This document shows, piece after piece, positions 40,561 to 60,017 of a DNA stretch of 64,000 nucleotides (position 1 is the stretch's first letter; the number at the start of each line of letters is the position of its first letter). Made by a program: the position numbers and the translations under genes. The notes below the pieces were generated by a model that searched no databases, was not told the DNA's origin, and saw nothing but the letters and a program-made list of their open reading frames with translations. This stretch comes from Sphyrna mokarran (taxonomy: Eukaryota), in assembly GCA_024679065.1 (NCBI GenBank), contig JAGIQG010000004.1, forward strand, positions 62,744,001 through 62,808,000, given 5' to 3'.

Positions 40561-43075
40561 TACATTACATCTATGTTCTACATTACATCTCTATTAATGT
40601 CTTGGGACCGAATGACAACGAGTAGAAAGGAGTTCTGTGTTTTGCAGATTCTGGTTTCCAACTGTACCAACTATACCACTTTGATTTTCTGAGTCAAATT
40701 CCTTAGTCAAGATTATATTCATTCCATAAGATCGCAAGACCTAGGACCAGAATGAGACCACTCGGCCCATCGAGTCTGCTCCGCCATTCAATCATAGTTG
40801 ATATTTTTCTCACCCCCCATTCTTATTCTCTCCTTTACTCCCCATGCTACCCCACATTCTCTCCCTTTTGGTCTATCCTTTCTAAATAATGAACAACCCT
40901 GAATGTTCAGTTTGTAAATTTCTGAACTGTCGCCACATTTCTGCTCTTGTGGCTTACCATGACAATTTAAATCTAGATGTGCTGTCTATTTCTTTCCATT
41001 TGGTGTAAGTTGGTTGTGCACTAAGAAACAAAGCCTCAACCTGGACTTTTAAACTTTGATAGTCGGCTTGAATTTATTTTGCACTACGACCCCATTTTCT
41101 ATACCCTTGTTTTAATCCCGCCTTATACTTTTAATTACTATATTTTTGCGTTTTGAAACTACTTATTGATCCTTCGTGTGCTTCCCAGCTTAGATTCCCA
41201 TCTTCCCGCCATTCTAGTTGGAATACCGCCCAACAGCACAAAGAGAATCCCCCATCCCCTTGTCAGCGGTGGACGTCTACAGTCTGTCAAATTGGACTGG
41301 TGGAAACTTCCGCAGAACTTCGCACAGGTCCCAGGGATCTGAAACCCTCTCTCCTGTACTAATTCCTCAGTTACGGATTCATCTGGTATTTGCCTTTCTA
41401 GCTAGCGCTTCGTATTGATAATAATGAATAGTTTATTTTGTCATTACTACTTAAATGGTTTAATGTGTGGGTTGAGACTTAGCAACATATTTAACAGTGA
41501 ATTAATTGAAACTCAGGACATTACGAACATCACAGCCAGAATGAGTTCCTTTGAGGATCGAACATGTAAACTCAAAACCTAACTGTATCAACAGGAAATT
41601 ATAAACTTAGTTATGTATGTGCTACATACTAGTTGGCTGAGGCAAATAAAACTTTATGTTCCAAGACGTCCTGGTCAAGGTCCCCCAAACTCTTTCGATT
41701 TCTTAATGATTGTTGCGGACTGCAGGTTTCTTAATTCTGCACTCTTCAATTGTGAACGAAATGATGAACTGTGTAACCGCGTGACAATGAAGATTGACCA
41801 AGGTTGAGAAAAATGTATGATCCATTGGAAAAACATCTACGCATGAATATGATATTTAACATGGATCTGTGAACAGCAAATCACGGCTGAAGGCCTGCTT
41901 CAGTTTTGCTGAAGGGCCATGTCAATGCTTTTAGCTTACACTCGTCAGGCACTCTCCAGAATATCTAATACAAAGCGAATAGAAGTTCGCGCTTCACGCG
42001 ACGAGGGGACTGAATGGTTGCAAACAGAAAGTGACAGGTAGTTGTTTTGTCAGTTGTTAACTAATGACGGACTGATAACCGCCAAGTTCGCTGCAGTGAA
42101 ATATGGCAAGTTGATTCTGAGTGGTCAATATGCTGCCCAAGTTACATTGCCCAAGTTAATCACTATCCTGTTCAGTTAAAACAATGGCAACGTAGCAATA
42201 TATGCTAATATTCCTTCTCTCTGCCAAGAACGGGGCTACGCTTATCAATGTATGCACCGTGTTGGACGCCTTTTTTTACACAAAGAAAACTCTATTCACG
42301 ATAATGAATTGAATATGCGCCCCAAGCTTCGTGCAATCAAGATTGTTAGGCAAACGTTTTCCGATCGCCGAATCAAATCTGACGTTTGTCCATGTGATTT
42401 GAGTTTTGCAGGAACGGACATTTTGTGCACTGTCAGTGTCTTGTATAATGCGAAGAGTGACATTTTATGTTGTTCGATATGATCCACAAGCCTTTGAGGC
42501 GTACGGTCTACATGTCCAAATTACTGAGACACAGATATTCAGCATTATTGTGACTCATTGTTTTCATAGGCCAAACGTATTTTTCGCTTGGCGCTTTGTT
42601 ACTTGTGAACATCAATTGCATTGCTACTGCAAAGGGATAACATGAAACAAGTAACTTTAAGTGTTTTTGCACTCTTCTCGGCATACTCGCCACTTTGTCT
42701 AAGACCAAAAGAGAGTGCCTGAAGTCCATTCATGCATTTGTTTGTGATAGGACTGCAGCGATCTAATGAAAAAAGGCCTTATTTTGCAGGATGGTTTATG
42801 CCCCTTATGTCAGAAAAGATTTGCTGTCGATTGTGTTTTTTTTTCCTGTTGTGTGCATAATCGCTCAGAATTTTCTTTCTCGCAATAATGGACGCCATAA
42901 TAGACGCCATAGCAAAATTGCAGCTTACGTGACTATTAGGGAAGAAATAGCATGAAGCTGTAATTGACAATGAAACGACATCATACGATTGACGATTTTT
43001 ATGCTTCCAATGAAAATTTAAACGAATTAAGTCACTGCCTTCCCACCTCACCCCTCACCATGTGCGCGCGTATAA

Positions 43076-43107
43076 ACACACACACACGCGCGCGCGCGCA
43101 CACACAC

Positions 43108-43142
<35 letters not shown>
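43076..43142. repeat. (CA)n/(CG)n compound microsatellite upstream of the receptor gene
   Basis: Uninterrupted purine-pyrimidine alternation including a (CG)6 run. Confidence 0.9.
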
Positions 43143-43147
<5 letters not shown>

Positions 43148-43624
43148 ACCATCAGAACCAACTGCGTGGGCATACACATTTCCTCCAGGGCTTGGCGTTG
43201 GCAAAACATCAGTTGGATATTCTGCGCGTATATACTTATTTCGTCAATATTTGTTTGATACATCCAATAAAGTTGCCATTATTCCTTAGACCATGACCAC
43301 ACTTCGAACTATTATGTTCAATTGAACAACAATGCGGAACAGCTGTCATTGTTATAATTCTTTGTATTAAATAATATTCGAGTCCGAAACATTGATGAAT
43401 GAGTTGGAAAGCTTTGAGCTAAATGAAACATACTTTATTTCGACTGGGACTTGGAAAAACGCAGCCAGGCGCTGTGACGCTAAGCGTGTCTCTCTTGATA
43501 TTTCCAATTCTGCTCTTCGATGTTATGTGTCATTTCCTCTGGTTCACGTCAGAGTAAACGATTATACCTCTATGCGATTCACCGTGCTGTTTGGCAGAGA
43601 AGACGTGGCTGCCTGTTCTCAAGT

Positions 43625-43679
43625 ATGTCTGTGCTCAATGTTGGAATTTTAATGCGGATCATAGCCATCTTTTGTACAG
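43625..43679 (+). CDS. Exon 1: signal peptide (MSVLNVGILMRIIAIFCT)
   Basis: ATG at 43625 (alternative in-frame ATG at 43652), hydrophobic stretch, phase-1 donor CAG|GT at 43679/43680, short intron with pyrimidine tract before the V exon. Confidence 0.75.
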
Positions 43680-46600
43680 GTTGTTTTATTTCTTCCTGTC
43701 TTGTTTAATGTCCATGTCTGTTTGTTATCTTGTTAAATGTACTGCTACTATGTGTCGTTCATACGATCATTATTCTGTTTTACGATAGCTGGCATTCGCG
43801 CTAATTTTCAAGTCTCTCAAGTTCCTGAAAACACAGACGCTGTCTTGGGTACAAACGTTACTCTCTATTGCACATTCCCTATTTTTCAAAATATATTAAA
43901 TGTGGAAGTTTACTGGTGGAAATTGGGTGAAATCGGATTTCTGCACACAAGTCCAGATAACAGGAAAACATTTCTCCGCTTTAAGCAAGGGGGTGCTTCA
44001 TTTCAGCTCCTGAATATCAGTGTCCGGGATGCTGGTGTGTATTACTGCGGTGTCAAAACTTTGGAAAACAGGACTGCAAATGGAACCGGCTCAACGATCA
44101 AAGTATCTGGTAGGTAACGTTCTGGCACGAGGAAAAGGAAAGCTCATGGATAATATGGTGTTGCCTTTATGTCTTAAATTCAAATTGGTTATATATTAGA
44201 ATAGACATATCCACGTCCATGTATTGTTCGTTTCCAGGCAGTAGTAACGAACGTCGTTGTGCCAAAATATGAACGTCGTTGTTCCAGATGTACAGTAGAA
44301 AAGTGGCATACCTATTTGACATGATTTATTAGTTCTTACATCAGCGCATCTATATTTCATTTAAAGTGCCCCGGAAACTGATCGAAAAATGTCCCTACTT
44401 AGGGGTTAAAATGAATGAGTTGCACTATCTGGATAAAAGCCATATCACGATTTCTTCTAAACCCCTCAATAAATATTTGAACTGTCTAACAAAGGTGTGA
44501 ACCAAATGCGAACCAAATATTTGGTGATGAATTTGTATGATTAATCGCTAATGATGAAGTCTGGACAAAACGTTTTTTTACAATTCTGTGGATTTTTTTT
44601 ATGTTAGGAATGCTTAGAGAAGATTTTCACAGTCCTTCTGTGTTATGAAATGATACCTTGCCAAAACTCATTTATGCAAGGAACTCAATTGACTATAACC
44701 AACAGTTGATGAGAACCTAAATTCTTTCAACTATAGCCTGTGGCCTGGAATAGGTATTATTTACACTATAGTTATGTTCCCATAGTACATTATATTATGA
44801 ATTAACAATCTTTGATCATTGCCTATTTCAATTTGCTCAACAAGATCCTTTTTTGAAAAGTCTTACCGAAAAAGAGAGAAACATGCAATAGACAATGGAG
44901 CCATTGGATCAATTATGCTTGTGTTGCATCTTTGTAAAGTGCATTTATTAGTCCTAGTTCCCTGCAGTTTCCCAATAACCCTCTAATCTATGTTCGAACA
45001 CTAACAAATATGTTGCGAAATGATTTCCATACAAGAATACAAATTTGTTGCAGTTACCTAACGCTCATGGAGATCATATTGGATAAAGAAAATGTAAGTT
45101 GTGCAATCAAGAGAAAACTAACCCGTATTATTATTCTTTGTTTTATTTCTACTCTTCGCAGTTCCACCAACTCCGCTGAAGATTTTTCCCAAAGTACGTG
45201 AAGTAGACCCTTCTTTCCTTGATCTTCTGTGCAAAACCAGTGAATTTTACCCAAATGTGCTCAATCTTAGTTGGTATGAAGACGGAATTGAGATCAGGAA
45301 CAGCACGGTGACAACGAAGTCATTGAACATAAATGGACTTTATGAAGTTTCAAGTACATTAAAGAGGACGCAACCTGTAAGAAGCACAACTGTTTACACC
45401 TGTCAGGTTTCTCACGTCACACTCCCTGTCCCAGCTAAAGTGGAATTTACTCTTCTGAGTCCCAAGCAAGGTAAGGACCGACATCCTTAACAACTCAATG
45501 AACTGGAGAGACACTATTGTGCATTTACATTGTAACTTCACATTGGTGGGGCACGCACTAATTTAAAATACATTTCAAACATGCAGCGTAGATTTGGAAT
45601 CATTTCATAACTGAAACGTGAGCGAATGCAAACTTCAACAATTTGGCAACGTTTTGTTGTTACTCGTCCAATCGCTAAGGAGCTTAAATAAGTTACTCTA
45701 AACACGTTTATAAAATTATGTTTTATAATTGAGTGCTTCAGAAATTGCAGCTGCACTCTCAAGGCAGAAATTGCACGTACGAAGAACAAGGAAAAAAGAA
45801 CAAAACAGTCCGAGAAACATGCCCTTCGGCCCAACGAGCCCGCACCGCCACCCCAATGCTCCCACCTCTACCCGCGATCCCTGTCCATGTTTATAGATCT
45901 ATGGATTAAAAACCAAATTTGAGACAATTTAGGGAGAATTTGTTTTGCCAATTAGCCTAAGAGCACATCTTTGGGATGTGGGAGGAAACCGGAGCACCCG
46001 GAGAAAACCCACGCAAGCACAGGGAGAATGCACAAACTCCTAAGAACCCCTGAAGAGGATTGATTTTTGACATTCTTTGCTTTTTTTTTGGCTGGTGGCA
46101 GCTGCTCACCAGGGTGCTGTTCCATTTGTGGTAGGAAATGGTGGAAGATATAAAATACAAGGACAGCTCCATGAATTCGCAATAAGAAGGGGGAGCTACT
46201 GGAGTGCATTCTGGAAAAGCTGATTTTCCTTCCCAAGAGGATCCTAAGACCAGTTATTTTTCTACTCCCTCTCCCCTCAGTTTAAACTCAGTTCATGTAA
46301 CCATTAGGGACCAACAATCCAATATTTATACTGTCCATTTCAAAAGTTTTTCCCTCAAGCAACTTATTCCACTACATTTTACTCTTCTTGTTGACTTATC
46401 TCTTCACAAAACAGCAGACAAAGAGCAGTATAACGTAGGAAAAAGCCCTTCTGCTCATCATATCTGTGCTGACACAGATTTCTCTCTCATTTAATGTTTC
46501 CTTGCCTCCATGTAGTCCATATTCCTCTATTCCCTGCCTATTCATGTATCTACAGTAAGAAGACTCTCAACACCAGGTTAAAGTCCAACGGGTTTATTTG

Positions 46601-49600
46601 GTAACAAAGGCCACTAGCTTTTGGAGCGCTACCCCTTCATCAGACTGTTCACAAACAGGGCATATAAAGACACAAATTCAATTTATAAAATAATGATTGG
46701 AATGTGAGTCTTTACACCTAATCAAGTCTTAAAGATACAGATGAAGTGAGGGGGGAGAGGGACAAGCACAGGTTAAACAGATGTGTATTGTTTCTAGATA
46801 GGACAGTTAGTGAGATTTTGCAAGTCATGGGAGTTATAGATAGTATGACACGAGTCCAAGATCATGTATCTATCCAGAAGCCTCTTGAATCTTGTTATAG
46901 AATTGGCTTCCACCTCCACCTCCGGCGGTGCGTTCCGGGCATTTACCACTCTTAGCGTGAAAAACTTGCCATTACATCACTTAAACTTTCCCCCTCTCAC
47001 CTTCAACCCATGCTCCTGACTAATTGACCCTTTGACTCTGGGGAAAAAAGACTGACTTTCCACTTTATCTAAGCCTGTCATAATCTTATAAATCTCTATC
47101 AAGTCTCTCCTCATCCTCTGATGCTCCAGCGAAAACAATCTAAGTTAGTTCAACTTTTTTCATTGTCCGTATCCTCCAAGCCAGCCAACATCCTGGTAAA
47201 TATCTTCACCGTTTCCAATGCATCAAATCGTACGTAACTTAATAAAGTAGTTTGTTTTCGAAAAAAAAGAAATAATCTGCTGAATTACCTGGGGTTCTCA
47301 ATCGTTTAATGGCAAAAATGCGAAACGGAACCTGATCATTGCAGTTGGATGATGTTATCTCCTTAGTTTCTTATGTAGTGTGTTTTGTTTGTAATTTATA
47401 CCATTTTACTTTCGAATTAATCTGAGTTATCTCAAACAAGTCCATTACTTTGAAGATTTGCTCACGTAACCTAACCACAGGCCTCTGTTACTATTGCAAC
47501 TACCGTATTTTTCTTTGGACGTTTCTCGAAAACCAAATTTAAACACCAGCACTTGAGTCAATTATTAGCTGCGGGCAATATTTTATAAAGTATGATTCCA
47601 AAAACATGAAAAATTAATAAATTTAAATAGCCATGGGTATAACGGTCTATTAATTAATAAAATGGTAATAACTCTACTAATTTCAGTTCCGAACTTCATA
47701 ATCAACCCTTCTTCACTGCGTTCCCTCGAATGCAATCGACGTATAATTAAGTAACAAACCCAAACATACTTCAGACTTTACCGCATCTCAATACTGTATT
47801 AAAACTCCCATGGATGCATAAAGTAATTATCTGGCCGTCAAAGTAAAAACATCAGTTTCCCTCCTCGTTCTTTCCTGCAAATCGACACAAATTAGTTTGT
47901 TTGTCAACACTTATTAGCATGTTTTTTTTTTGCTGCTTCACCATCATTCTGAGCAATGTCGATGGTTGAACATGTTCCCATATTATGGTGCACGTGCCCA
48001 TTTTAATACCCAGACACTAAATTGATTGATTCCATAGCGACTAATCTGCAACTACTTCCCCGACACCTCCCTCCCCCCGCTTCCTTCCACCCCCCCCCCC
48101 CCCCCAAGAAAAAAAAAACAAAAATCCCACCTGGTGCTAAAAAAAGCTTGAAAATCTTACACTTGCACACTGAATACAAGCTATTGATTTATTTTATGAA
48201 CAACACAGGCATAAAAATCGACATCTGTGGCAATCAGAAGAGTAGAGCGGTCTTACTGAAAGGAATTGTTTGCAAATGTATTAAAGCTACCACTTTGCGT
48301 TGTTCGACAACTCAATGAGCTGGAGATACCTTAGAAAAAATGCTCTAATTGATTTGTCACATGAGGCTTTCCCTGCATAACACACTATTCAACCTCCCCA
48401 ATCGAGTTGTCAGGAATAATTTCTTTCACTTTCATAACGATACTTCGTTACTGTGAAGCTAATTGAAAATTTGTTCCACATTTTCATCATTCTTCCTTTA
48501 TTGTAGAGTACTGTTATGTCGGCCAATTTCCAATGCAGGAGAGCACTTCCGGAAAATAAATTTTCTTCAAATATAATGGTCTTGTTTTGAGCGTATGCAG
48601 GCATAAGTATAAAACAAAGCAATTTCTCAGAGATAATTTTCTTTAACTGTAATAGTCTTGTTTTGAACATATCCACGCACATGTAAAAAACAAATCTTGT
48701 CATATGATCACAACTCTTCTCCATTAGTTCACATAAATAAGGCTCTGACCTGAATTTCATTATTACCCCATGAGCAATCGAGCAACGTTTGCTTCGAAAA
48801 TCGCATCCCAACATATTTTGGAACTGTTCACTGAATGCATTTCATGAGCGCGGTTTGAAATCTATATTTTCTGATTGGGATTTCTGAACCAATTCATAAA
48901 TAAAAATCGTCCAAGAACATTATCTTTGTTATAAGTGCTTCTAAATGTGCGATATTTATCCCCCGAACCATTAAATTTGAGGTGAGCGGAATTTTAAAAC
49001 ACTTCTAACGGTGTATTCTGGCGCTTGTTTATCTCTTGAATTTATAATCATTCATATTGCTATTATAAATAAACCTTCATTGCCTGGAAAAACGAACATT
49101 ACTTCTTTCAAAAAAAATCTATTACCCAGAAATATTTAGTTTCCAAGTGCTCCGCTCTCAGTTACCACTGCTAGGTGAAACAATTATTATCTTACTTTTA
49201 GTATCACTAGTCGGTTTACATTAACACTGTAATGAAGTTACTGTGAAAATCCCCTGGCCATCACATTCCGGCTCCTGCTGAGGGAGAATTTAGCCTGGCC
49301 AACACACTTAACAGACACGTCTTTCGGACTGTTGGAGGAAAATGGGGAACGCAAAATAAATCCACACAGACATGGGGACAACTTGCAATAACTGTTCAAA
49401 GTTGGGAATTAAACACGGGTCCCTGGTGCTGTGAAGCAGGAGTCCTAACCACTATGCCACCGCACCGGAACGAACTGGCCATTACGTTATCTATCACTTC
49501 GGAACATTTGCTGATTCATCTTTGTTTTCTGACATGGAACCTGTCGTCATTAATTGAGCGACATTCAGAATTCTCCTGCCATTATTTAGAAACACTGCAG

Positions 49601-52600
49601 TGCAAAAAAGACCATTCGGCCCATGGAGTCCACACCAGCGCTTTGACCAATTATCTCACTCAGGCGCTCGCCACTGCACTATCCATGTAATCCATACAGT
49701 TTTCTGGCTATCTAATACCTAAAAAGCTACCTAATACCTAAAAAGTCATCTAACCTGCATACCTTCGGACTGTGAGAGGAAACCCATGGAGATTTGAGGA
49801 GAATGTGTAAACGCCACACAGTCACCTAAGATCGAAATTGAATCCAGATCCCTCCACTAGTTAGCAGCTGTGTTAACGATTGTACCATTGTGCCACTGTG
49901 TCACACGGCTTTACCTGTACTACTTCAGTCATAATATAGATAGGACATTACTTACTTAATGTGGTTTCTGTCATTATTTTCCGTTGTAAATCAGGTCCTG
50001 AGTTCCCGTTCAACAATCAAGTTATTTATATGAGTACTGCAGTTGTATTTATAATTCTAGTGGTGATCGCCATCACCGGGAGCTACTGTCACCAAAATAA
50101 AAACGGTAAAGAAGGTTTTTATTTCAAAGTAACCTAAAGATCGTCAAATGCATGAAATCGAATAATTTGAGTAAAAGCTAAAAAACCTATGACATCCAAT
50201 TTGTAAAATGCAGTTACATTCATTCGTTAAGTCTAGCGCCACGGGGAATTCGTAAAGTATTCTCTATGTTTTGATCCGTGGTAACCTAATTTAATTATAT
50301 TTGCTTCACTTTGAGATGCAGTTTAAACAAAATAGTTACCTGGAACAATAAAATTCAGGCACTATGAAACAATTAATGTTCTTGTCTGAGTTCTGAACTG
50401 CCTCTGTAGTTTTGATGCCATTATGAACACCAAACGGAAGGTACGGCAACACAATGGTTAGCATTGCTATTTCACAGTGCCAGGGACCTGGGTGCGATTC
50501 CTGGTTTGGATCGCTATCTGTGTGAAGTTTGCGCGTTCTCCCAGTGTCTGCATTGAGTTTTTCCTGAGTGATCTGGTTCCCTCCCATATTCTGGAAGGTG
50601 AGTTGGTTAGGCGCATTGACCCGAACAGGCGCCGGACGGTGGTGACTGGGGGAATTTTGCAGTAACTTCATTGCAGCGTTAATATCAGCCTTGCGTGTGA
50701 CTAATGAACGCAGTTTACATTATCATTTAATTAGTATTTGATATATAATTCAAAAAAAAACGTCGTTGATACCATTGTTTTAGTTGTTTAGAATCATAGA
50801 ACACTACACTGCAGAAAGAGCCCCTTCCACACATCGAGTCTGCACGGACCACAATCCCACCCAGGCCTACCGCCATATCCCCGCTAATTCCTCTGACCTA
50901 CACATCCCTGGACAATAAGGGACAATTTCTAAGCGTGGCCAATCAATCTAACCCACACATCTTAGGAATGTGGGAGGAAACCGGAGTCCCCAGAGGAAAT
51001 CCACGCAGACATGAAGAGAATGTGCAAACTCCACACAGAAAGTGACCCGAGTCAGGAATTGAACCGAGGACCCTGGAGCTGTGAAGCACCAGTGCTAACA
51101 ATTGTGCTACCGTGTCGCCCCGAATTGGAGATTATTGGAGTAGGATTGCGTTTAAATAATATTTTCATATAAATGCCCACATTTTTATTGGAATCAACCA
51201 GATTGTCCTTCTTTAGAATTTTGCTGATCAATTGAAATTCATGGCAGAATAATAATTTAATTCCTTATCAGGAGGGTGCCGATATGTCGATACTTCAGAA
51301 CTTCGTGAACAGCAGGTAATTTCATATTATTGTTGCTCATGCATGTTAAATAAATTAAGAAATGATACGGCATTGAATCATTGCAATTAAACTCCACGTT
51401 GATCAATTGAATTTTGCATTTCTTTTGCTACTTAGAAACGTTCACAAATATACGTAAGCCTTGTTGAGAAAAGGTCTGCACAGTGGTACAAATGTTAGCT
51501 CTGCTGCTTCATCGCCAAGGCCTCGGGTTTCATACTTGGTTTGTGTCACTCTCTGCGCAGAGTCTGAATTTTCCTCGCGTCTGAGTGGGTCTGAGAAAAC
51601 CCACGCAAGTCACAAAATGTCAAAATTGGACATCAACGTTTCAACTTTCCATTTAGTTTTCATATAATTTGGAAACCAATTTAAAAACGTATTTTATCTG
51701 TTCATCTGTTTATAGGCAGAGCAGAGGATGAACTGATATTAAAATACATTGAGTTCGAAGAGCTCCGCTATCTTCGAATCAAAGACTCTCTACAGTATAG
51801 AAAGAGGTCATTCGCCAAATCAATCCTCGTACGACCATAATCCCACCCAGACGTTATCCCTCTAATCCCACATAATTATCCCTCTAATCTCCCTAATACT
51901 GAGGGGCAATTTAACATAGCGAATCCAGATAAACTGCGCATTTTTGGAATGTGCAAGGAAACCGAAACAATCTGAAGAAACTGACAGACAACGGAAAAAC
52001 GTGGAAACTCTACATAGACAGTCTCTCGCGTCTAATTATAAATAGGAGAGTTAATCTGCTAGAGGAATGGGCAGCGTTTGCCAAAGCACGATGATAAAAA
52101 TAACATAAAGGTGCGTCAAAAGTCTATCCTTTACGCTGGTCCATTCAGTGCGGTGCTTCTACAAAACTTTATATCAGCTATCTTATTCTTTCTTTTCGGG
52201 AAATTATTCAATTTCATAATTATGCATAAAGTGACAGAAAAATTCGAAAATGTTCCAATTAACAGAATCAGACTGCTGGATTATATCAGGTAACAGCTGA
52301 CCAAAGTAATTGATACTTTTCCAGAAATTGCTGAATGAGTTTAAAGAGGAATGCGATGGCTGGTAATTATATGGACTATCAAAACGCGTCTGATGCAAAA
52401 GGCATTAGCGACAATTGAATTAAAGTTAAATTTAATTACTTAATTCCTACAATGTTGAAGGAGGCCTTCCACCTATCAAGTCTACACGAAAATCCGAACA
52501 GAAGAAATTGTACAGTCGTTCACATCTACTGCGACAAACCACCTAATCTACATATCTTGAGACACTCAGGGACAATTTGACATGACCAATCTACATAACA

Positions 52601-55600
52601 CACATGATAGAACCGTTAGCAGGAAACTGTAGCACTCATGGAAAATCAAGTAGACATGAAGAGAATGTATTTGATTTGATTTTGTTTGTTATTGTCGTAT
52701 TTATTAGCAGTGAAAATATTATTCCTTGTGCACTAAACAGACAGGGCATAGCATTCAAAGAGAAGAAAACGAGAAAGTGCAGAATACGGAGTTACAATTA
52801 TTGTTAGGGTGTAAAGAAAGATCTACTTAATGCAAGGCAGGACCATTTAAAATTCTGATGGCAGCAAGGAAGACGCTGTTCTTGAGTCGGTTAATGTGTG
52901 ACCTCAGACTTTTGCATCTTTTCCCGATGCAAGGATGTGGAAGAAAGAATGTCCAGGGTGCATGGTGCTCTTAATTATGCTGGCTGTTTTGCCAAGATAG
53001 CAAAAAGTGTAGATAGAGTCAATAGATGGGAGACGGGTGTGCTTATGGATTGGATTACATTCGCAACCTTTTGTATTTTCTTGTGGACTTCGGTAGAGCA
53101 GGAGTGAAGGCAAGCTGTGGAAGTTGGTGACAGCTGCAGCTAACATGCCAAATTTGCGTAGTCTTCCTCAGTCTTTTGAGAAAATAAGGACGTTGCTGGG
53201 CTTTTTTTTTCACTTTTGTGTCGGCACGGGAAGAATAGGACAGGTCGTTAGTGATGTGGACACATGAAAATTTGAAGCTGCTGACTCTTTCTACTTCATC
53301 CACATTGATGTGGACAGCGACATATTCTCCTCTACGCTTTCTGAAGTTAATGACAATCTGTTTTGTTCTGTTGACATTGAGGGAAAGATTATTGTGGCGG
53401 CCCAAATTCACCAGGTTTTCAATCTCATTCCTGTACTCTGTATTGTCATTGCTTGAGATCTGAGCCACACTGCTGGTGTCATCAGCAGCTTGAAAATTGA
53501 GTTGGAGGGGAATTTAGCTACACAGTCATAGGTAAATAAGAGGTATACTAGAGGGCTGAGAACATAGCCTTGGGGAGGTGGGGAGCACTGGTGTTGAGGG
53601 TGATCGTGGAGGAGATGTTGTTGCCTACCCTTAATGACTGTAGTCAGTGAGTTGGGAAGTTCAGGATCCAGTCACAGAGAGAGAGGAGAGTAGGCCCAGA
53701 TCACAGAGTTTGAAGATGAGTTTCGTAAGAATAATGGTGTTGATAGTTGAGCTGTTGTCAAGAAAAAGCGGTCTAACATAGATGTTTGTTGTCTAGGCGT
53801 GGCAGTTTTCAGTGCAGTGCCGGGGGATAGCTTCTGTTGTGGACCTGTTGCAGCAGTAGGCAAACTGTAATGGATCCACGCTGCCAGGGAAGCTGGAATT
53901 CATTCGTGCTATGACTAGCGTTTGAAACACTTCATAATGATAAATGCCAGAGTCATTGAATGATAGCCATTGAGGAACACAGCTTGGCATTTCATTAGTT
54001 CCAGGATGATGGTCGTTTTCGTGAAGCAGATAGGGACCTAAGATTATTGAAAAGAGAGTTTGAACATGTTTGTGTATATCCCTGCCTGCTGATCACGCAG
54101 AATATGAGAGCCGGTCAGGGTACCCCGTCGGACAGTAGTTTTCTGTGAGTTGACCTTCGAGAAAGCTGATCTGACAGCGGCAATGGTGACCTCATGTATA
54201 GCTTCATACAAGACTTCTAGGGTGGAGGGTACGGTCTCACTGGTATCTTGCTGAAAACGGGCTTGGAATACATTGAGCACCTTGGAGGTGGGGGGGGGGA
54301 CGCTATTGGTCCGTACGAGCCCATGATTTTACATGCCTTCGTCTTACAGCCTGTAATGCCTTGCAGACCTTGCCATAGTCGGCAGAGGTATGTGTGACTG
54401 GCCTAGGTCTCTCGCTTGGTCTGGTACTGTCTTTTGGCATCATTCATAAATCTCCTATGATCGTTTCTGGCTTTCTTGTATAGGTCAGGATTGCCTGACT
54501 TGAATGCCCCAGACCTAAAGTAAACACCTAAAGTAAAATGATCTGCCGAGGCTGGAATCGAGCACGTTTCCCAGGCACTGTGAGACAGCATTAAATTAAA
54601 TTATTTACATGGCATGCATATTTGAACAATGGTAGTCGACAGGTACTAGCAATAATAGGCAAACACTCCGATTGCTGGGATATAACTAGTTTATTCTCAT
54701 AGAGCTATGTGGAGACTTTGAGGATTCGTGGGATTTATTCGGGACTTCGTGAAATAAAACACCACACATTAAAATTTCTTGATGACACAAATATAGGACA
54801 GTACAAAGTCTCACAACATCAGGTTAAAGCCCGACAGGTTTATATGGTATCACGAGGTTTTGGAACGTTGATCTCTTTCACCAGTGGGGAGGAGTGTTCG
54901 TAAAGACGGCGAGTATAGACAGTGTCTTGATTGCAAGATAATAATTGAAATGCAAGTCTTTACAGGTAATCAAGTCTTTACAGGTACAGGAAATGCGAAT
55001 GGAGAGAGTAATAATTACAGGTCAATGAGGTGTGAATTGTCTCAAGCCAGGACAGTTAGTAGGATTTTGCAAACTCAGGCCAAATTGTGGGGATTACATG
55101 AAGTGTGACACGTGCGCAAGATTCCGGCTGAGGATCTTCTCCTCATGTGTGTGGAGAATTGACTATCAGTTTCTGACTTGGGGGTTGTGCATTGTTGTGT
55201 GTCTCGAGTGTCACAGGGATGAACGGACACTATGCGACAATCACCAAACAGGAATGCTCTCTTCCTGTCGGACAATACTTCAGCAACCAAAGGTATTTAG
55301 TTTTCGATTTTCTGTTAAACGTTCTCCAAGGCAGACTCCAAGACGCACGATAACGCAGAAGCGTCGAGCAGAAACTGATACCTAAGTTCACATGTATAAG
55401 ACGGCTTCAACCATGTTCTTGGGTATATGTCATACTCCCAGTCACCCCACCATTTGACCCTTGCGTGCACAATCTTGCTGACTGGCCTGGCTTGAGACAA
55501 TTCAGATCTCTTTAACCTGTTATTAGTCCTCTCTCCACACGCATTGTTTTTTCTTGCATAGACTTGATTGCATGTAACAGCTTGTATTCCAAACATTCTC

Positions 55601-56350
55601 TTACAATCGAGTCTCTGTCTATATGTGCCGTCTTTGTGAATCCACTTTCCCACACACCTGATGAAATAGAAGTGCTCTGAAAGCCTGTAATGCCAAATAA
55701 ACCTGTGTTGTGAGACTTCTTACTGAATCCAGCTTAATCCAAAGCCAGCACCTGAACTTCCAAAACATAGAAGTTATTGTAAACCTATTAAAGGAAAAAA
55801 GAGATGTGCTATTTCATCCGTTTAGAGAGATATTTTGGGGACATAGCAACATTGTCTGAAAAACATAGAACTACAAATTTCAAGAGTGTAATTAGGAATA
55901 CATTCTAGAGGGAGGGAAATATTCTAAACTTTGTGGGATTGCTTACAAGCATGCTCATTATTTTTGTTTGAATTGTCCCCGAAATAATGTATTAATAGAA
56001 ATGTGCCACGTATGTAAATTCAAGGGCGACAATTCGTGAGGCACTAAATGATTCGCCACCATGCTAATGGTCTCATGCATATCATTTTTACTTTTGTTCA
56101 AAGAACATTGACGTAGTTTTGTCGGTAGATAAATAAAACAATGAGCTAACAACATTCTCCATCGTTAACTTCACAGATGGAGAAAGTCACCACTGATAAC
56201 AAGCTGACTTATGCTTCTCTTGATCTGAATGGCTTCAAGAAAACCCGGAAACCGAAATCTAATGAGGTAAATACAGAATATGTTCAGCTTAGTACGACGA
56301 TGCCAAGCAGAGCAACAGAGGTTATCTACACCGAAACCGGAGTCCCATAA
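43625..56350 (+). CDS. Multi-exon IgSF receptor gene: leader-V(J)-C1-TM-cytoplasmic tail with ITIM/ITSM (SIRP-like / non-rearranging antigen-receptor-like), ~337-351 aa
   Basis: Hand-assembled exons 43625-43679, 43789-44109, 45162-45470, 49995-50105, 51272-51315, optional microexons 51436-51453 and 52266-52289, and 56177-56350. All have AG/GT boundaries and compatible phases (1,1,1,1,0,0,0); 1056 nt including stop, no internal stop. Confidence 0.88.
43789..44109 (+). CDS. Exon 2: V-set Ig domain with germline-encoded J-like G strand
   Basis: AGIRANFQVSQVPENTDAVLGTNVTLYC...VYWWK...ASFQLLNISVRDAGVYYCGVKTLENRTANGTGSTIKVS: B-strand Cys, C-strand Trp, DxGxYYC and GxG(S) motif. Acceptor tacgatag|, donor G|GTAGGT, 321 nt, phase 1-1. 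Confidence 0.95.
45162..45470 (+). CDS. Exon 3: C1-set Ig domain
   Basis: VPPTPLKIFPK...LLCKTSEFYPNVLNLSWYEDG...NGLYEVSSTL...YTCQVSHVTLPVP: C1 signatures CxxxxFYP, W and YxCxVxHxxL. Acceptor ctcttcgcag|, donor AAG|GTAAG, 309 nt. Confidence 0.95.
45783..46040 (-). mobile_element. Family B 3' terminal fragment in intron 3
   Basis: Nearly identical to 37555-37810. Confidence 0.85.
46420..47230 (-). mobile_element. Old CR1 3' fragment interrupted by a Penelope piece
   Basis: Minus strand reads FTRML...LFSLEHQRMRRDLIEIYKIM...KVRGGKFK; tail region at ~46420-46460. Confidence 0.7.
46553..46861 (-). mobile_element. Penelope pLTR fragment with hammerhead-core remnant
   Basis: Homologous to 54805-55110; minus strand CTGATGAAGGGGTAGCGCTCCAAAAGCTAGTGG; flanked by TCATGTATCTA at 46542-46552 and 46862-46872. 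Confidence 0.8.
49200..49465 (-). mobile_element. tRNA-derived SINE, second tail type
   Basis: Same head and central domain, with a GGATTTTCACAGTAACTTCATT-type 3' region. Confidence 0.7.
49585..49900 (-). mobile_element. HE1-type SINE (degenerate)
   Basis: Homologous to 50788-51120, with an internal CTAATACCTAAAAAG duplication. Confidence 0.7.
49995..50105 (+). CDS. Exon 4: stalk + transmembrane helix
   Basis: GPEFPFNNQVIYMSTAVVFIILVVIAITGSYCHQNKN; acceptor aaatcag|, donor G|GTAAAG, 111 nt, phase 1-1; no charged residue in the helix. Confidence 0.85.
50436..50720 (+). mobile_element. tRNA-derived SINE, second tail type
   Basis: GGCAACACAATGGTTAGCATTGCT...GGGACCTGGGT head; CAGTAACTTCATTGCAG 3' region. 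Confidence 0.75.
50788..51120 (-). mobile_element. HE1-type SINE
   Basis: Full-length homolog of 6038-6370. Confidence 0.85.
51272..51315 (+). CDS. Exon 5: cytoplasmic (GGCRYVDTSELREQQ)
   Basis: Acceptor ttccttatcag|, donor CAG|GTAAT. The 44-nt length converts phase 1 to phase 0, as needed to join the TM exon to the terminal exon. Confidence 0.75.
51436..51453 (+). CDS. Candidate 18-nt cytoplasmic microexon (KRSQIY)
   Basis: tttcttttgctacttag|AAACGTTCACAAATATAC|gtaagc; strong splice sites, phase 0-0, open frame. Confidence 0.5.
51780..52025 (-). mobile_element. Degenerate HE1-type SINE
   Basis: Homologous to 50788-51040. Confidence 0.6.
52266..52289 (+). CDS. Candidate 24-nt cytoplasmic microexon (NQTAGLYQ)
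   Basis: ttccaattaacag|AATCAGACTGCTGGATTATATCAG|gtaaca; phase 0-0, open frame, but only a moderate pyrimidine tract. Confidence 0.4.
52669..54520 (-). mobile_element. Degenerate Rex1/Babar-type LINE in the last intron
   Basis: Minus ORFs: AFKSGNPDLYKKAR, VDPLQFAY..NRST, EYRNEIENLV...NNLSLNVNRTKQIVINFRK; (ATTTG)n tail at 52669. Confidence 0.8.
54805..55722. mobile_element. Penelope-like element: inverted pair of GIY-YIG C-terminus + pLTR segments
   Basis: Plus 55216-55440 reads RMNGHYATITKQECSLPVGQYFS...VLQGRLQD...EQKLIPK...GFNHVLGYMS, followed by a pLTR with CTGATGA(55658)...GAAA(55679). 54805-55213 is a diverged reverse-complement copy. Confidence 0.85.
56177..56350 (+). CDS. Terminal cytoplasmic exon with ITIM and ITSM-like motifs
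   Basis: Acceptor aacttcacag|; MEKVTTDNKLTYASLDLNGFKKTRKPKSNEVNTEYVQLSTTMPSRATEVIYTETGVP*. LTYASL 56204-56221, TEYVQL 56273-56290, VIYTET 56321-56338. Confidence 0.85.
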   Translation: MEKVTTDNKLTYASLDLNGFKKTRKPKSNEVNTEYVQLSTTMPSRATEVIYTETGVP

Positions 56351-56970: not shown

Positions 56971-58207
56971 CGGAACATCGCGCAATTCTGTCTGTCAAAA
57001 ATTCTACATTTTCAACGTTAATTTACTGTAGTAATGTAGACAAACTCATTCTAAACAAGACCAAAGAAACCTTGGATAATATTATGCAAGAGGTAGAATA
57101 GTGTGATGGGCAGTAAGAAAAACAGATTATGTTAATAGTTCCTGGACAGAGGTTGACAACAGGAACGCACATTTTCAATTTCATTAAGTATGGCATGTGA
57201 GAACCTATGGCCGGTGAGAATCTAGAAACTATCATTTTCACGAAACAGGTAGCGTTGGCAAGTAAATGGAGCTAAAGCTAGACAAGTCTCCAGGTTCTGA
57301 TCGAATGCATCCCAGGATACTAACAGAGATGGCGGGAGAAACAGCAATTGCACTCGTGGTAATTTACAAAATTCGCTGGACTCTGGGGTGGTTGCTACAG
57401 ATTTGAAAACAACAATGTGACAGCACTATTTTAAAAAAAGGAAGCACACAAAGGCAAGTATCAATAGACCGGTTACCTTAATTTCTGTAATAGGGAAATT
57501 GGTTGAACCTATCATCAATGAAAAAATAGCGAGATGTCTGAATATAAATGGTCCCATTGGTGAGATGCAGCATGTATTCATGAAGGAGTTATGTTTAACT
57601 AAGTTTGCGGAATTCTTTGATAGCATTACATGTGCAGTGGGCAATGGGGAACCTGTGGATGTGGGGAATCTGGATTTCCAGAAGGCATTTGACAAGATGT
57701 CGCACCAAAGACTGCCATGTAAGATAAGGTGCACAGGTAATGCATTAGCATGGATAGAGGATTGGTTAACTGACAAAAAGCAAAGAGTGGGTGCAAGTGG
57801 TTACTTTTCTGACTGGCAGTCAATGACCAGAGGTGTGCCTCAAGGATTAGGGTCAGGCAGATGAAGTACTATATTGGTGAATGCGAGGTCATCTATTTTG
57901 ATAGGAATAAAAGCAAAATGGACTATTAATTAAACGACAAAAAATGCAGCATGCTGCTGTGCAGAAAGACCTGGGTGTCCTTGTGCCAGAATCTCAAGAA
58001 ATTGTTTTACAGGTGCAGCAGGTAATTAAGAAGCAAATGGAATTTTGTCCTTCATTGCTAGAGGGATGGAGTTTAAAAACAGCAAGGTTATGTTGCAGCT
58101 GTGTAATGTGCTGGTGAGGTCACACTTGGAGGACTGTTTACAGTTCTGGTCTCCTTACTTGAGAAATAGTATACTGGCACTGGAGGGGGTGCAAAGGATA
58201 TTCACGT

Positions 58208-59690
58208 ACAACAACAACAAAGAACAGCACAGCACGGGAAACAGGCCCTTCAGCCCAACGAGCCCGCGCCACCATCCTAACATCTTAATGACATATAGAG
58301 ACCAATATAGGGACAATTTGTTACCCAATCAGCCTAAGAGCACATTTTTTGGGATGTGGGAGGAAACCGGAGCACCCGGAGAAAACCCACGCAACCACGG
58401 GGAGAACGCGCAAACTCCCGCAGACACAGGCCCAAATCCATGTGTCTGCACAGCAACAGCAATAGTCTCTGAGCTGTCATGTTGCCCATCTGATGGTCCA
58501 GTTTAAGCATACACTAACGACGTGAAGCACTAGGCCACTCCTGAAGTAACCTCCAGGAGCAGCCCTCGCACGACCTGCTGAATGCATGCACCTTGTTGGT
58601 CAACAAGGTGGACCGAATAGCCTGTGGAAACAATTAAAGTATTTAAACAGTCCTCATATATCCCTCTATCTCCAGACCGCTCATGTGGCTGTCCAAGAGA
58701 CCCTTAAACAACCCTAGCGTGCCTGCTCCCACCACCTTACTCGGTAGTGCATTCCACACCCCCACTACCTTTTGTGTGAAAAAAATGCCCTCTAATATTA
58801 GTCTTATACGTAGCCCCCCTCACCCTAAGGCCGTGACCCCTCGTTCTATCCGAATCTAATGGTGGAAAAAGCTTACCACCATTTACTCTATCTATACCCC
58901 TCATAATCTTATATACCTCTAATAGATCCCCTCTCAGCCGACGTCTTTCAAGGGAAAACCACCCCAGTGCGTTCAATCTTTCCTCGTAAGACAGCCCTTC
59001 CATACCAGGCAGCATCCTGGTAAATCTCCTCTGCACTCTCTCCAAGGCCTCCACATCCTTCCGGTAGTACGGCAACCAGAACTGGACGCAGTACTCCAAG
59101 TGAGGCCTAACCAACGTTCTATACACTTGCAACATCAAACTCCTACTTTTGTATTCTATACCCTTCCTATGAAGGCTAACATACCATACGCTTTCTTTAT
59201 CACATTCTCCACCTGTACTGACACCTTCAGAGACTTGTGAACCTGCACCCCCAGGTCTCTCTGCTTCTCTATACTCCGGATAGTTTTACCTTTTATCCTA
59301 TAACTCCCCTCTACATTATTCCGGCCAAAATGCATCACCTCGCATTTATCTGGATTAAATTCCATTTGCCATCTATCTGCCAATCTACCAGCCTATCTAT
59401 GTCCTGTTGTATTGCCTGGCACTGCTCCTCAGTCCCCGCCAATCCAAGTATCTTAGTGTCATCAGCAAATTTGCTGATCACACCACCTACCCCCTCTTCC
59501 AATTCATTTATACAAATCACAAATAGAAGAGGTCCTAGTACTGAGCCCTGTGGCACACCACTAGTGACTGACCTCCAGTTGGAGAAAGAGCCTTCCACTA
59601 CTACCCGCTGTCTCCTCATCCCAAGCCAGTTCTCAACCCATCTACATACCTGGCCCTGTATCCCATGCGCCTTCACCTTTTTTATCAGCC
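58208..59690 (-). mobile_element. CR1 family B-related subfamily, nested in an older CR1
   Basis: Minus ORFs 58737-59751 are RT C-terminal pieces; a diverged version of the same composite 3' UTR lies at 58208-58660. Confidence 0.9.
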
Positions 59691-60017
59691 TAAACTTAGT
59701 TGGGAGGTTTGGCTTATGAGTAGGGATTGAATAGACTGGGGCTATTTTCATTGGAATTCAGAAGAATGAGGGGAAATCTTACTGAAACGTAAGATAATGA
59801 AAGGAATAGTTAAGATAGAAGCAGGGAAGTTGTTTCTACCGGCGGGTGGACCACGAGCTAGTGGCCATAGCCTTAAAACACGGGGAAGCAAATTTAAGAC
59901 TGAGATGAAGAGAAACTTCTTCACACAAAGGATTGTGAATCTGTGGAAGTTTCTGCCCAGTGAAGAAATTGAGGCTATGTCGTTGAATGTTTTTAAGGCA
60001 GGGATAGTTAATTTTTT

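What the first reader, a model, noticed from the sequence alone, without database searches (positions are those of the whole stretch)
43625..56350. Intact non-rearranging V(J)-C1 receptor with an ITIM + ITSM-like tail: antigen-receptor-type ectodomain on a checkpoint-type tail
Seen: spliceable exons give leader-V-C1-TM-cyt with no stops; the V exon already contains its J-like G strand (NGTGSTIKV), so there is no V/J split; the TM is uncharged; the tail has LTYASL, TEYVQL and VIYTET. Known: C1 domains are largely confined to Ig, TCR, MHC/B2M, tapasin, SIRP and some B7-family proteins. Joined VJ + C1 + ITIMs is the SIRP-alpha plan (V-C1-C1, tail motifs like LTYADL/TEYASI), and ITIM followed by a TEY-type ITSM is also the PD-1 arrangement. 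Inference: this is a shark inhibitory receptor with a TCR/Ig-light-chain-like two-domain ectodomain, possibly from an uncharacterised family relevant to the pre-RAG ancestor of antigen receptors. Orthology cannot be assigned from this window.
Basis: partly seen in the sequence, partly recalled or inferred. Interest (0 to 1): 0.88.

Follow-up and report, generated by a model that had tools for sequence, protein, structure and literature searches.

The report
Shark SIRP-like inhibitory V-C1 receptor gene
This is an intact gene for a cell-surface immune receptor of a cartilaginous fish: an antibody-like two-domain outer part on a tail built to switch cells off, one member of a large, so far unnamed shark, ray and chimaera gene family that resembles mammalian SIRP receptors.

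Summary
There is an intact + strand gene at 43625-56350. It has six exons, not five. The product is 337 codons, not 351.

Pfam calls the two ectodomain exons V-set and C1-set. The V exon ends in a J-like GxG strand, and no RSS is present. The membrane span is uncharged. The tail carries LTYASL and TEYVQL with their tyrosines 23 residues apart.

A 337-residue RefSeq model of Mustelus asterias, auto-named 'immunoglobulin lambda-1 light chain-like', is the ortholog (V 90%, C1 87-88% identical). V and C1 trees agree on a shark-wide orthologous group.

The gene belongs to a large family seen only in sharks, rays and chimaera. RefSeq names its members inconsistently: SIRP-alpha-like, tapasin-related, Ig lambda-like, B7H6-like. 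Some members have ITIM tails and others have short tails. The closest solved relatives are Ig light chain, SIRP alpha/gamma and UrIg2.

I read it as a SIRP-like inhibitory receptor. Homology with SIRP is unresolved.

First readers of this scan noted the same kind of gene at eight other places in this genome.

The parts
43625..43679 (+). Exon 1: start codon and split leader (18 codons plus 1 base, phase 1 donor GT). It is followed by a 109-base leader intron (43680-43788).
   Evidence: Sequence; splice table; 17 of 19 residues identical to the start of P0001.
43789..44109 (+). Exon 2: V-set Ig domain with the J-like G strand in the same exon.
   Evidence: Pfam V-set 5.6e-9; 90% identical to P0001; AG/GT sites.
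44079..44105 (+). J-like G strand NGTGSTIKV (GxG bulge motif, also an N-glycosylation sequon).
   Evidence: Translation. In the family alignment the second G is invariant, and N and the first G are present in at least 90% of 25 sequences.
45162..45470 (+). Exon 3: C1-set Ig domain.
   Evidence: Pfam C1-set 1.1e-12 against CD80-like C2-set 5.7e-5. PDB matches to Ig C domains, UrIg2 and SIRP alpha. Identity to P0001 is 88% by BLASTP and 87% in the tree alignment.
49995..50105 (+). Exon 4: connecting piece, membrane span and start of the tail.
   Evidence: Sequence; 24 of 34 residues identical to P0001; AG/GT sites.
50021..50089 (+). Membrane span VIYMSTAVVFIILVVIAITGSYC, with no charged residue.
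   Evidence: Translation (ORF); boundaries judged by eye.
51272..51315 (+). It restores the frame between exon 4 and exon 6.
   Evidence: tblastn of P0001, 14 of 16 identical; AG and GTAATT sites. The same segment is present in P0001, P0152 and P0153.
56177..56350 (+). Exon 6: tail with the tyrosine motifs and the stop codon TAA (56348-56350).
   Evidence: Sequence; 43 of 57 identical to P0001; 30 of 52 identical to P0152. In all, 14 family proteins match this exon at E below 1e-3.
56204..56221 (+). ITIM LTYASL.
   Evidence: Sequence. It fits the (I/V/L/S)xYxx(I/V/L) consensus, which I recalled rather than took from a call.
56273..56290 (+). ITSM-like TEYVQL, with its tyrosine 23 residues after the ITIM tyrosine.
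   Evidence: Sequence. The same 23-residue spacing occurs in 10 family proteins.
56321..56338 (+). Third tyrosine motif VIYTET, of unknown meaning.
   Evidence: Sequence. The tyrosine is kept in P0001, P0152 and P0008, and is His in P0153.

Best explanation
The region holds one intact, non-rearranging gene of six exons and 337 codons. It encodes a type I membrane glycoprotein: split leader, V domain with a built-in J-like GxG strand, one C1 domain, an uncharged membrane span, and a tail with an ITIM (LTYASL) followed 23 residues later by an ITSM-like motif (TEYVQL).

It is the ortholog of uncharacterised RefSeq models in Mustelus, Scyliorhinus, Heptranchias and Heterodontus. It is one member of a large family seen only in cartilaginous fishes, whose members carry either such inhibitory tails or short tails.

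Inferred, not shown: the V domain binds an unknown ligand; Src-family kinases then phosphorylate the two tyrosines; the doubly phosphorylated module docks the tandem SH2 domains of SHP-1 or SHP-2 and damps activation of the leukocyte that carries it. This is the way SIRP alpha works. The short-tail relatives would be its activating or decoy counterparts.

The plan is that of SIRP with one C1 domain instead of two. Whether the family shares a direct ancestor with SIRPs is open.
For: Gene model:
- Canonical AG/GT sites at all five introns, consistent phases, 1014 bases with the stop codon.
- Every exon matches the 337-residue ortholog P0001.
- The 44-base exon 5 is also present in P0152 and P0153.

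Domains:
- Pfam V-set 5.6e-9 and C1-set 1.1e-12.
- The GxG strand and the VPPTP linker are conserved in 25 family members.
- No RSS is present.

Orthology: V and C1 trees, built separately, both pair the window with P0001 (SH-aLRT 98). Both place it in the same five-row clade with P0152, P0153 and P0003 (99 and 97).

Family:
- 257 representatives at E up to 1e-3 with the V exon alone.
- 56 proteins at E up to 1e-10 with the family profile; 55 of the 56 rows name a cartilaginous fish and one row shows no species.
- Eight other first-reader notes of the same kind in this genome, one of them 160 kb upstream (untested).

SIRP likeness:
- The family profile aligns end to end with SIRP alpha D1-D2 (61.7 bits). 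Its C1 part matches SIRP alpha D3 at 49.8 bits, against 24-34 bits for IgG and UrIg2 C domains.
- SIRP gamma also ranks high.
- By language-model features, the nearest Atlas clusters to the chimaera member P0155 are SIRP-alpha-like (0.96).

Tail:
- 21 of 51 named family proteins carry ITIM or TxY motifs after the membrane span, and 16 of 51 have short tails without them.
- In 10 proteins the two tyrosines lie exactly 23 residues apart, as in the window.
Against: - No transcript evidence: no RNA run was listed, so the junctions, above all 50105 to 51272 and 51315 to 56177, rest on conservation and on other species' predicted models.
- An alternative in-frame model without exon 5 exists (exon 4 read on to 50128, weak donor GTAACC).
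- TEYVQL has Leu where the strict ITSM consensus has Val or Ile.
- The closest ortholog, P0001, has His in place of that tyrosine, and P0153 has Phe at +3 of the ITIM. Neither motif is therefore kept in every ortholog.
- SIRP is not clearly the nearest relative. An Ig lambda chain scores slightly higher over V plus C (65.6 bits). With the V domain alone, neither SIRP nor NKp30 is among the best 60 PDB sequences.
- ITIM plus TxY tails occur in many unrelated Ig receptors; CD33 is an Atlas neighbour at 0.94. The tail likeness may therefore be convergent.
- Cell type, ligand and phosphatase binding are all untested.
Confidence: 0.7

Rival explanations
1. The family is the shark NCR3 (NKp30) family already described in nurse shark (Kinlein et al. 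2021). The gene would then be a new member of a published family.
For: RefSeq names a V-only isoform of a family member (P0046, Pristis) 'natural cytotoxicity triggering receptor 3-like'. The full-length isoform in the same 90% cluster is named SIRP-alpha-like. The Flajnik 2025 paper lists eight nurse shark NCR3 genes and calls NCR3 a non-rearranging VJ gene.
Against: The papers I could read speak of NCR3 as a VJ single-exon or V domain gene, and treat UrIg as the novel VJ-C1 gene. NKp30 chains are not among the best 60 PDB sequences for the V exon or for the V profile. No nurse shark entry and no row named NCR3 itself (as distinct from its ligand, NCR3 ligand 1-like) appeared among the 39 and 56 family hits. 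The Kinlein paper is not held, so its domain plan is unknown to me.
Confidence: 0.15
2. The family is a true co-ortholog of tetrapod SIRPs, descended from the same ancestral gene, and has lost or never gained the second C1 domain.
For: Contiguous V-C1 match to SIRP alpha at 61.7 bits, and SIRP alpha D3 at 49.8 bits against the C1 part including the VPPT linker. SIRP gamma scores 100.5 bits. The family shows a paired long-tail and short-tail structure. One skate member has V-C1-C1 (P0075). Atlas neighbours point the same way.
Against: An Ig lambda chain scores as high. The V-only profile does not bring up SIRP. The profile search of 5.8 billion proteins returned no tetrapod SIRP, though that tool only sees proteins that share exact words with the query. 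No synteny data are available. In P0075 the two C1 domains are near-identical copies, which suggests a recent duplication rather than an old D2-D3 pair.
Confidence: 0.25
3. The gene is an unexpressed or decaying copy in a fast-turning-over receptor cluster, intact only by chance.
For: No RNA run was listed. Tail motifs vary between orthologs. Repeats fill the introns.
Against: Six exons are open with all splice sites intact. The length equals that of the Mustelus ortholog. The ectodomain is more conserved (87-90%) than the membrane exon and the tail (71-75%). The orthologous group is kept from Carcharhiniformes to Hexanchiformes.
Confidence: 0.07
4. It is a germline-joined immunoglobulin light chain cluster, which cartilaginous fishes are known to have.
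For: RefSeq names the ortholog 'immunoglobulin lambda-1 light chain-like'. An Ig lambda chain is the top PDB match of the family profile. Germline-joined VJ-C clusters exist in sharks (abstract of PMC2193156, in the listing).
Against: Membrane and tail exons follow the C1 exon and are conserved in the orthologs. Only 1 of the best 60 PDB matches of the V exon is an antibody light chain (E 0.0044). The V domain has WWK where light chains have the WYQQ-type strand (recalled).
Confidence: 0.01

Closest known systems
SIRP alpha / SIRP family (mammals, birds)
   Same: An N-terminal V domain with a J-like strand, followed directly by a C1-set domain. A type I membrane protein. A tail with ITIM-type tyrosines in pairs. 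A family with long-tail and short-tail members. It is the best solved non-immunoglobulin match over V plus C1.
   Different: One C1 domain instead of two (no second C1 exon). One tyrosine pair instead of two in this gene. The V domain is compact and does not retrieve SIRP on its own. The ligand is unknown. Orthology is untested.
UrIg and UrIg2 (elasmobranch non-rearranging VJ-C genes; PMC12227049)
   Same: Non-rearranging VJ exon with a split leader, C1-type domains, elasmobranch. UrIg2 (PDB 9dmx) is the second-best PDB match of the family profile.
   Different: According to the section read, nurse shark UrIg2 has nine C domains, and UrIg has several. The window gene has a single C1 and an ITIM tail. 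Per-domain scores to UrIg2 are lower than to SIRP alpha.
NKp30 / NCR3
   Same: A non-rearranging V domain with a GxG strand. RefSeq names one V-only isoform of the family NCR3-like.
   Different: The window gene has a C1 domain, an uncharged membrane span and an inhibitory tail. NKp30 chains are not among the best 60 PDB matches. The features of mammalian NKp30 used here are recalled.
B7 family (PD-L1, CD276, B7-H6)
   Same: A V-C two-domain ectodomain. PD-L1 and CD276 are among the best PDB matches of the V exon. CD276 matches the family profile over its V-C units. Some family members are auto-named B7-H6-like or CD276 homolog.
   Different: The C domain scores as C1-set (48.6 bits), not CD80-like C2-set (23.5 bits). 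The gene also has a J-like GxG strand and an ITIM/ITSM-like receptor tail.
PRARP (chicken non-rearranging IgSF genes, Fu et al. 2019)
   Same: Listed with SIRP, NKp30 and others among Ig proteins with a joined VJ domain (passage read).
   Different: It could not be compared. The paper is not held and no PRARP sequence was available. What I know of its domains is recalled only.

Membership tests
SIRP family | N-terminal V-set domain followed by C1-set domains | tested here: met
   Pfam V-set and C1-set. Contiguous alignment to SIRP alpha D1-D2 at 61.7 bits.
SIRP family | Three Ig domains (V-C1-C1), as in the solved SIRP alpha ectodomain (abstract of PMC2785349) | tested here: not met
   Only one C1 exon. 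No further family-like hit lies between the exons. No Ig domain was found in 5 of 5 + strand intron ORFs tested.
SIRP family | Closer in sequence to SIRPs than to other V-C1 proteins | tested here: inconclusive
   SIRP alpha scores 61.7 bits against 65.6 bits for Ig lambda over V plus C. SIRP alpha D3 at 49.8 bits is the best single C1 match shown. The V-only profile does not list SIRP among the best 60.
SIRP family | Tail tyrosines that bind SHP-1/SHP-2; V domain that binds CD47 | not testable with these tools
   The motifs LTYASL and TEYVQL are present. Binding needs experiments.
SIRP family | Shared synteny or orthology with the tetrapod SIRP locus | not tested
Apart from this gene, the window holds only repeats.
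NKp30 / NCR3 | A single VJ-type V domain with no C domain, and a basic residue in the membrane span (recalled for mammalian NKp30) | tested here: not met
   A C1 exon is present. The membrane span is uncharged.
NKp30 / NCR3 | V domain closest to NKp30 | tested here: inconclusive
   NKp30 is not among the best 60 PDB sequences. However, RefSeq names a V-only isoform of a family member NCR3-like.
NKp30 / NCR3 | MHC linkage | not testable with these tools
   All eight MHC-related notes of this scan that were listed lie on other pieces of the genome. This is a weak negative and unchecked.
UrIg / UrIg2 | VJ exon with a split leader | tested here: met
   Leader split in phase 1, a 109-base leader intron, and the J-like strand inside the V exon.
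UrIg / UrIg2 | Several C domains in a row (nine in nurse shark UrIg2; section read) | tested here: not met
   One C1 exon only.
Immunoglobulin light chain (germline-joined cluster) | V-J-C with no membrane anchor, and a light-chain type V domain | tested here: not met
   Conserved membrane and tail exons. Only 1 of the best 60 PDB matches of the V exon is a light chain.
B7 family | V domain plus a CD80-like C domain | tested here: inconclusive
   The V exon matches PD-L1 and CD276 at E 4e-5 to 1e-4. The C domain prefers C1-set (48.6 bits) over C2-set_2 (23.5 bits).
ITIM/ITSM inhibitory receptors (a functional class) | (I/V/L/S)xYxx(I/V/L) followed by TxYxx(V/I) in the tail (consensus recalled) | tested here: inconclusive
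   LTYASL fits. TEYVQL has Leu at +3. The 23-residue spacing is conserved in 10 family proteins. The Mustelus ortholog has His for the second tyrosine.

The most novel reading that the evidence does not exclude
This family may be the surviving cartilaginous-fish branch of the pre-RAG membrane receptor of the VJ-C1 type, from which both SIRPs and the rearranging antigen receptors descend. Under this reading, its long-tail and short-tail members pair through their C1 domains, as T cell receptor chains do. Sharks would then still carry, in dozens of copies, the kind of gene that the RAG transposon split.
Probability: 0.12. Interest if true: 0.85.

Novelty: new variant of a known kind. Interest (0 to 1): 0.55.

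Why it matters
C1-set domains are confined to antigen receptors, MHC molecules and a few associated proteins. SIRP alpha has been proposed as a link to the antigen-receptor precursor, and no SIRP gene is known from animals that predate adaptive immunity (PMC2785349, passages read). Non-rearranging VJ-C1 genes of sharks (UrIg, UrIg2) are currently put forward as relics of that precursor (PMC12227049).

A large family of VJ-C1 membrane receptors with SIRP-type inhibitory tails, present in sharks, rays and chimaera, would place the SIRP-type plan at the base of jawed vertebrates. It would also give many further candidates for that discussion.

For genome annotation, members of this family now carry at least eight unrelated names in RefSeq. 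A family name and profile would correct that.

This one gene is an ordinary member of the family. The interest lies in the family.

Tried and rejected
- Paralogs in the window: none. tblastn of all stored proteins under 800 residues found family hits only at the six exons. The other hits are repeat-derived parts of P0003 and P0026.
- A second C1 exon in the 4.5 kb intron: rejected.
- RSS: none.
- Structured RNAs: no Rfam match in the window.
- V-only profile against the PDB: dominated by multi-domain I-set proteins that sum their scores. It did not settle SIRP versus NKp30.
- C1-region search of the big protein collection with P0001 residues 126-229: only 21 candidates and 3 hits, so uninformative.
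- Atlas search with the V-only protein P0046: PD-1, TIGIT and SIRP beta-2 clusters at 0.92-0.94, which is generic.
- MHC linkage: I could not map contig lengths to chromosomes. The MBE paper places the white shark MHC on chromosome 19, but I could not tell which chromosome the 193.5 Mb contig holding the white shark family members is.
- Literature: ten searches found no paper that describes this family. These searches cover only the held library. Supplements were not opened.

The joined 337-residue model was never assembled, printed, searched or folded. Exons were searched one by one, and the database ortholog P0001 and the family alignment A1 stood in for full-length searches.

Full report
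WHAT IS IN THE SEQUENCE. On the + strand between 43625 and 56350 lies one intact gene. Reading the DNA and tabulating the splice sites gives six coding exons:
- exon 1, 43625-43679: leader, ends in phase 1
- exon 2, 43789-44109: V domain
- exon 3, 45162-45470: C1 domain
- exon 4, 49995-50105: connecting piece and membrane span
- exon 5, 51272-51315: short cytoplasmic exon
- exon 6, 56177-56350: tail and TAA stop

All five introns begin with GT and end with AG. The phases fit, and the exons add up to 1014 bases, which is 337 codons plus the stop. The leader intron is only 109 bases long.

CORRECTION OF THE MODEL. The good donor of the membrane exon (G|GTAAAG after 50105) leaves phase 1, whereas the 56177 exon starts in phase 0. 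A direct join would run into a stop after six codons (read). tblastn of the ortholog P0001 against the window found the missing piece at 51271-51318: 14 of 16 residues identical, flanked by AG and GTAATT. The same segment stands in the predicted proteins of Mustelus, Scyliorhinus torazame and Heptranchias. A weaker alternative that skips exon 5 (exon 4 read on to 50128, donor GTAACC) stays in frame and cannot be excluded without RNA.

DOMAINS. I searched the exons one by one.
- V exon: Pfam gives V-set for the V exon (E 5.6e-9, 36.6 bits against a cutoff of 26).
- C1 exon: Pfam gives C1-set (E 1.1e-12, 48.6 bits against a cutoff of 21). The CD80-like C2-set scores far lower (23.5 bits).
- Membrane and tail exons: the tail exon matched no family, and the two weak matches of the membrane exon (E 0.0084 and 0.028) lie far below their cutoffs.

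Against solved structures, the C1 exon matches immunoglobulin C domains; the best single domain is a lambda-type C region at 32.9 bits. It also matches UrIg2 (E 8.9e-14) and SIRP alpha (E 8.9e-13). The V exon matches pIgR domain 5, contactin, titin, PD-L1, CD276 and VTCN1. Only one antibody light chain appears among the best 60. The V domain is compact, with 59 residues between its two cysteines, which explains the I-set matches. No RSS heptamer or nonamer lies in or next to the V exon, so the V and J-like parts are joined in the germline.

ORTHOLOG AND ORTHOLOGOUS GROUP. An exhaustive HMMER search with the V exon against 1.84 billion representatives gave 257 proteins at E up to 1e-3, 91 at up to 1e-10 and 4 at up to 1e-30. 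The best is P0001, which is 337 residues long and 90% identical. It is XP_078066431.1 of Mustelus asterias, named 'immunoglobulin lambda-1 light chain-like'.

Identity to P0001, exon by exon:
- leader: 17 of 19
- V: 90%
- C1: 88% by BLASTP, 87% in the tree alignment
- membrane exon: 24 of 34
- exon 5: 14 of 16
- tail: 43 of 57

I built maximum-likelihood trees for V (51 rows) and C1 (52 rows) separately. Both pair the window with P0001 (SH-aLRT 98). Both enclose them in the same five-row clade with Scyliorhinus torazame P0152, Heptranchias perlo P0153 and Heterodontus francisci P0003 (99 and 97). The gene has thus been kept as a unit across sharks. The window's species is probably a carcharhiniform closer to Mustelus than to Scyliorhinus; this is inference.

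THE FAMILY. A search with P0001 gave 39 proteins at E up to 1e-5; 38 rows name a cartilaginous fish and one row shows no species. A profile of 25 members (A1) gave 56 proteins at E up to 1e-10; 55 rows name a cartilaginous fish and one shows no species. The weakest listed hit was still at 8e-60. Sharks, skates, rays, a sawfish and the chimaera Callorhinchus are all represented.

The names given by automatic annotation are inconsistent:
- SIRP-alpha-like
- SIRP-beta-1-like
- tapasin-related
- Ig lambda-like
- MHC class I-like and class II-like
- CD276 homolog
- B7-H6-like
- NCR3-like (for one V-only isoform)

These names appear. Several members of one species sit on the same long contig, for example more than ten on a 99.65 Mb contig of Heterodontus.

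The alignment shows a family signature: a WWK strand, the NGTGS (GxG) strand, a VPPTP linker, and the FYP, W and C-x-V-x-H landmarks of C1 domains. In the window itself there is only this one member. First readers of this scan noted the same kind of gene at eight other places in this genome, one of them 160 kb and one 8.4 Mb upstream of the window. I did not check those notes.

RELATION TO KNOWN FAMILIES. With the full-length family profile against the PDB, the best matches were:
- An immunoglobulin entry whose first part is a lambda V-C region: 65.6 bits contiguous.
- UrIg2: 118.9 bits in all, made up of 51.5, 28.7 and 34.1 per stretch.
- SIRP alpha: 111.5 bits in all. D1-D2 aligns end to end at 61.7 bits. 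D3 matches the C1 part, including the VPPT linker, at 49.8 bits.
- SIRP gamma: 100.5 bits.
- CD276: 88.6 bits over two V-C units.

The C domains of IgG score 24-27 bits each in the same output. By language-model features, the chimaera member P0155 lies nearest to clusters named SIRP-alpha-like and SIRP alpha (0.96) and to light chain-like clusters (0.95). This is a lead only.

A V-only profile (A2, built from the V exon and 13 V-only fragments) did not discriminate. Multi-domain I-set proteins headed the list. The best matches to chains of one V domain, or to a single stretch of a two-domain TCR construct, were a shark V-NAR (54.1 bits), TCR V domains and CD79b (about 49 bits). Neither SIRP nor NKp30 was among the best 60.

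The plan is therefore that of SIRP, with one C1 domain fewer. The sequence evidence places the family about equally near light chains and SIRPs. It is not UrIg or UrIg2, which have many C domains (section read). It is not a light chain, which has no membrane anchor. It does not fit mammalian NKp30, which as I recall has a single V domain and a basic membrane residue.

TAIL AND LIKELY MECHANISM. In the last exon the ITIM tyrosine and the TEY tyrosine are residues 12 and 35, that is 23 apart. I counted tail types in 51 named family proteins:
- 21 carry ITIM or TxY motifs after the membrane span.
- 16 have tails of 45 residues or fewer without such motifs.
- 11 had no span by my crude hydropathy cut. 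This cut wrongly excludes P0001 itself.
- 3 were other.

In 10 proteins the ITIM and TxY tyrosines are exactly 23 residues apart, and two of these proteins have two such pairs. Fourteen family proteins match the tail exon of the window at E below 1e-3.

A fixed spacing of two tyrosine motifs is what a bidentate dock for the tandem SH2 domains of SHP-1 or SHP-2 would need. That is established knowledge for SIRP alpha, PD-1 and similar receptors, recalled here and not tested. The inferred mechanism is that ligand binding by the V domain leads to phosphorylation of both tyrosines, recruitment of the phosphatase and inhibition.

Many short-tail members share an arginine at the outer edge of the span. 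One of them, Heterodontus P0003, falls inside the window's own orthologous group. This fits a paired inhibitory/activating family, but it is inference.

Against a strict reading:
- TEYVQL has Leu at +3.
- P0001 has His in place of that tyrosine.
- P0153 has Phe at +3 of its ITIM.

WHAT COULD NOT BE DONE.
- No RNA run was listed for the V-C1 stretch, so no reads were laid and expression is unknown.
There are therefore no loci from other species, no synteny, no dN/dS, no model and no fold search.
- Apart from this gene, the window holds only LINE-type repeats. It gives no neighbours.
- All eight MHC-related notes of the scan that were listed lie on other pieces of the genome. That is a weak and unchecked hint against MHC linkage.
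- The joined protein model was deliberately not assembled or searched. The database ortholog P0001 and the alignment A1 were used instead.

LITERATURE. What I read:
- PMC12227049: abstract and outline, its UrIg2 section in full and passages.
- PMC10751288: passages.
- PMC2785349: passages including the abstract.
- PMC11599192: one passage.
- PMC10450919: a reference-list passage.
- PMC12272517: passages, mostly reference-list entries.
- PMC8455134: one passage.

None of these describes a V-C1 ITIM family of cartilaginous fishes. Ten searches found no such paper in the held library.

The papers most likely to bear on this were not held and not seen: Kinlein et al. 2021 on shark NCR3, Flajnik et al. 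2012 on B7H6 and NKp30, Flajnik et al. 2023 on UrIg, and Ohta and Flajnik 2015. I saw Fu et al. 2019 on PRARP only as a citation. Supplements were not opened. The gene tables in the supplements of PMC10751288 might list members of this family.

VERDICT. This is a real, intact gene. It is one ordinary member of a large, publicly predicted but unnamed chondrichthyan family with a SIRP-like plan. I rate it as a new variant of a known kind and of moderate interest. The interest lies in the family and in its bearing on the SIRP/antigen-receptor question, not in this copy.

Noticed in passing
window 16340-19753 (+), 25340-27248 (-), 38097-39053 (-), 57421-59751: Several copies and fragments of a LINE. 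They have reverse-transcriptase ORFs and, upstream in one copy, a GDSL-esterase-type ORF (Pfam RVT_1 3.3e-8; Lipase_GDSL_2 1.4e-10). They fill most of the window outside the gene.
   Followed up: partly
window about 43060-43200: A CA/TG dinucleotide repeat lies about 450 bases upstream of the start codon. It shows up as THTHTH and CVCVCV reading frames in the ORF list.
   Followed up: no
P0003 residues 29-124; P0026 residues 236-254: Two RefSeq family models contain stretches that match repeat copies scattered over the window. Those parts of the predicted proteins are probably repeat-derived annotation errors.
   Followed up: partly
P0001 (Mustelus asterias ortholog), tail: The closest ortholog has His where the window has the tyrosine of TEYVQL. 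Heptranchias P0153 has Phe at +3 of the ITIM and His for the third tyrosine. The tail motifs drift within the orthologous group.
   Followed up: partly
family proteins P0003, P0159, P0163, P0165, P0182, P0057 and others: Short-tail members share an arginine at the outer edge of the membrane span (an xRF-hydrophobic start). Mobula P0013 has an arginine inside the span. This may be a docking site for an activating adaptor.
   Followed up: no
P0059 with P0061, P0037 with P0172, P0023 with P0021, P0046 with P0189: Predicted V-only isoforms share leader, V domain, membrane span and tail with V-C1 isoforms of the same gene, as if the C1 exon can be skipped. One such isoform is what RefSeq names NCR3-like.
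   Followed up: no
window 50106-50128: Reading exon 4 on to a weak donor (GTAACC after 50128) would join the last exon in frame without exon 5, adding GKEGFYFK. This is a possible minor splice form.
   Followed up: no
P0075 (Amblyraja) and P0154 (Scyliorhinus torazame): Domain number varies within the family. The skate protein has two near-identical C1 domains in tandem, and the catshark protein has two V domains before the C1.
   Followed up: no
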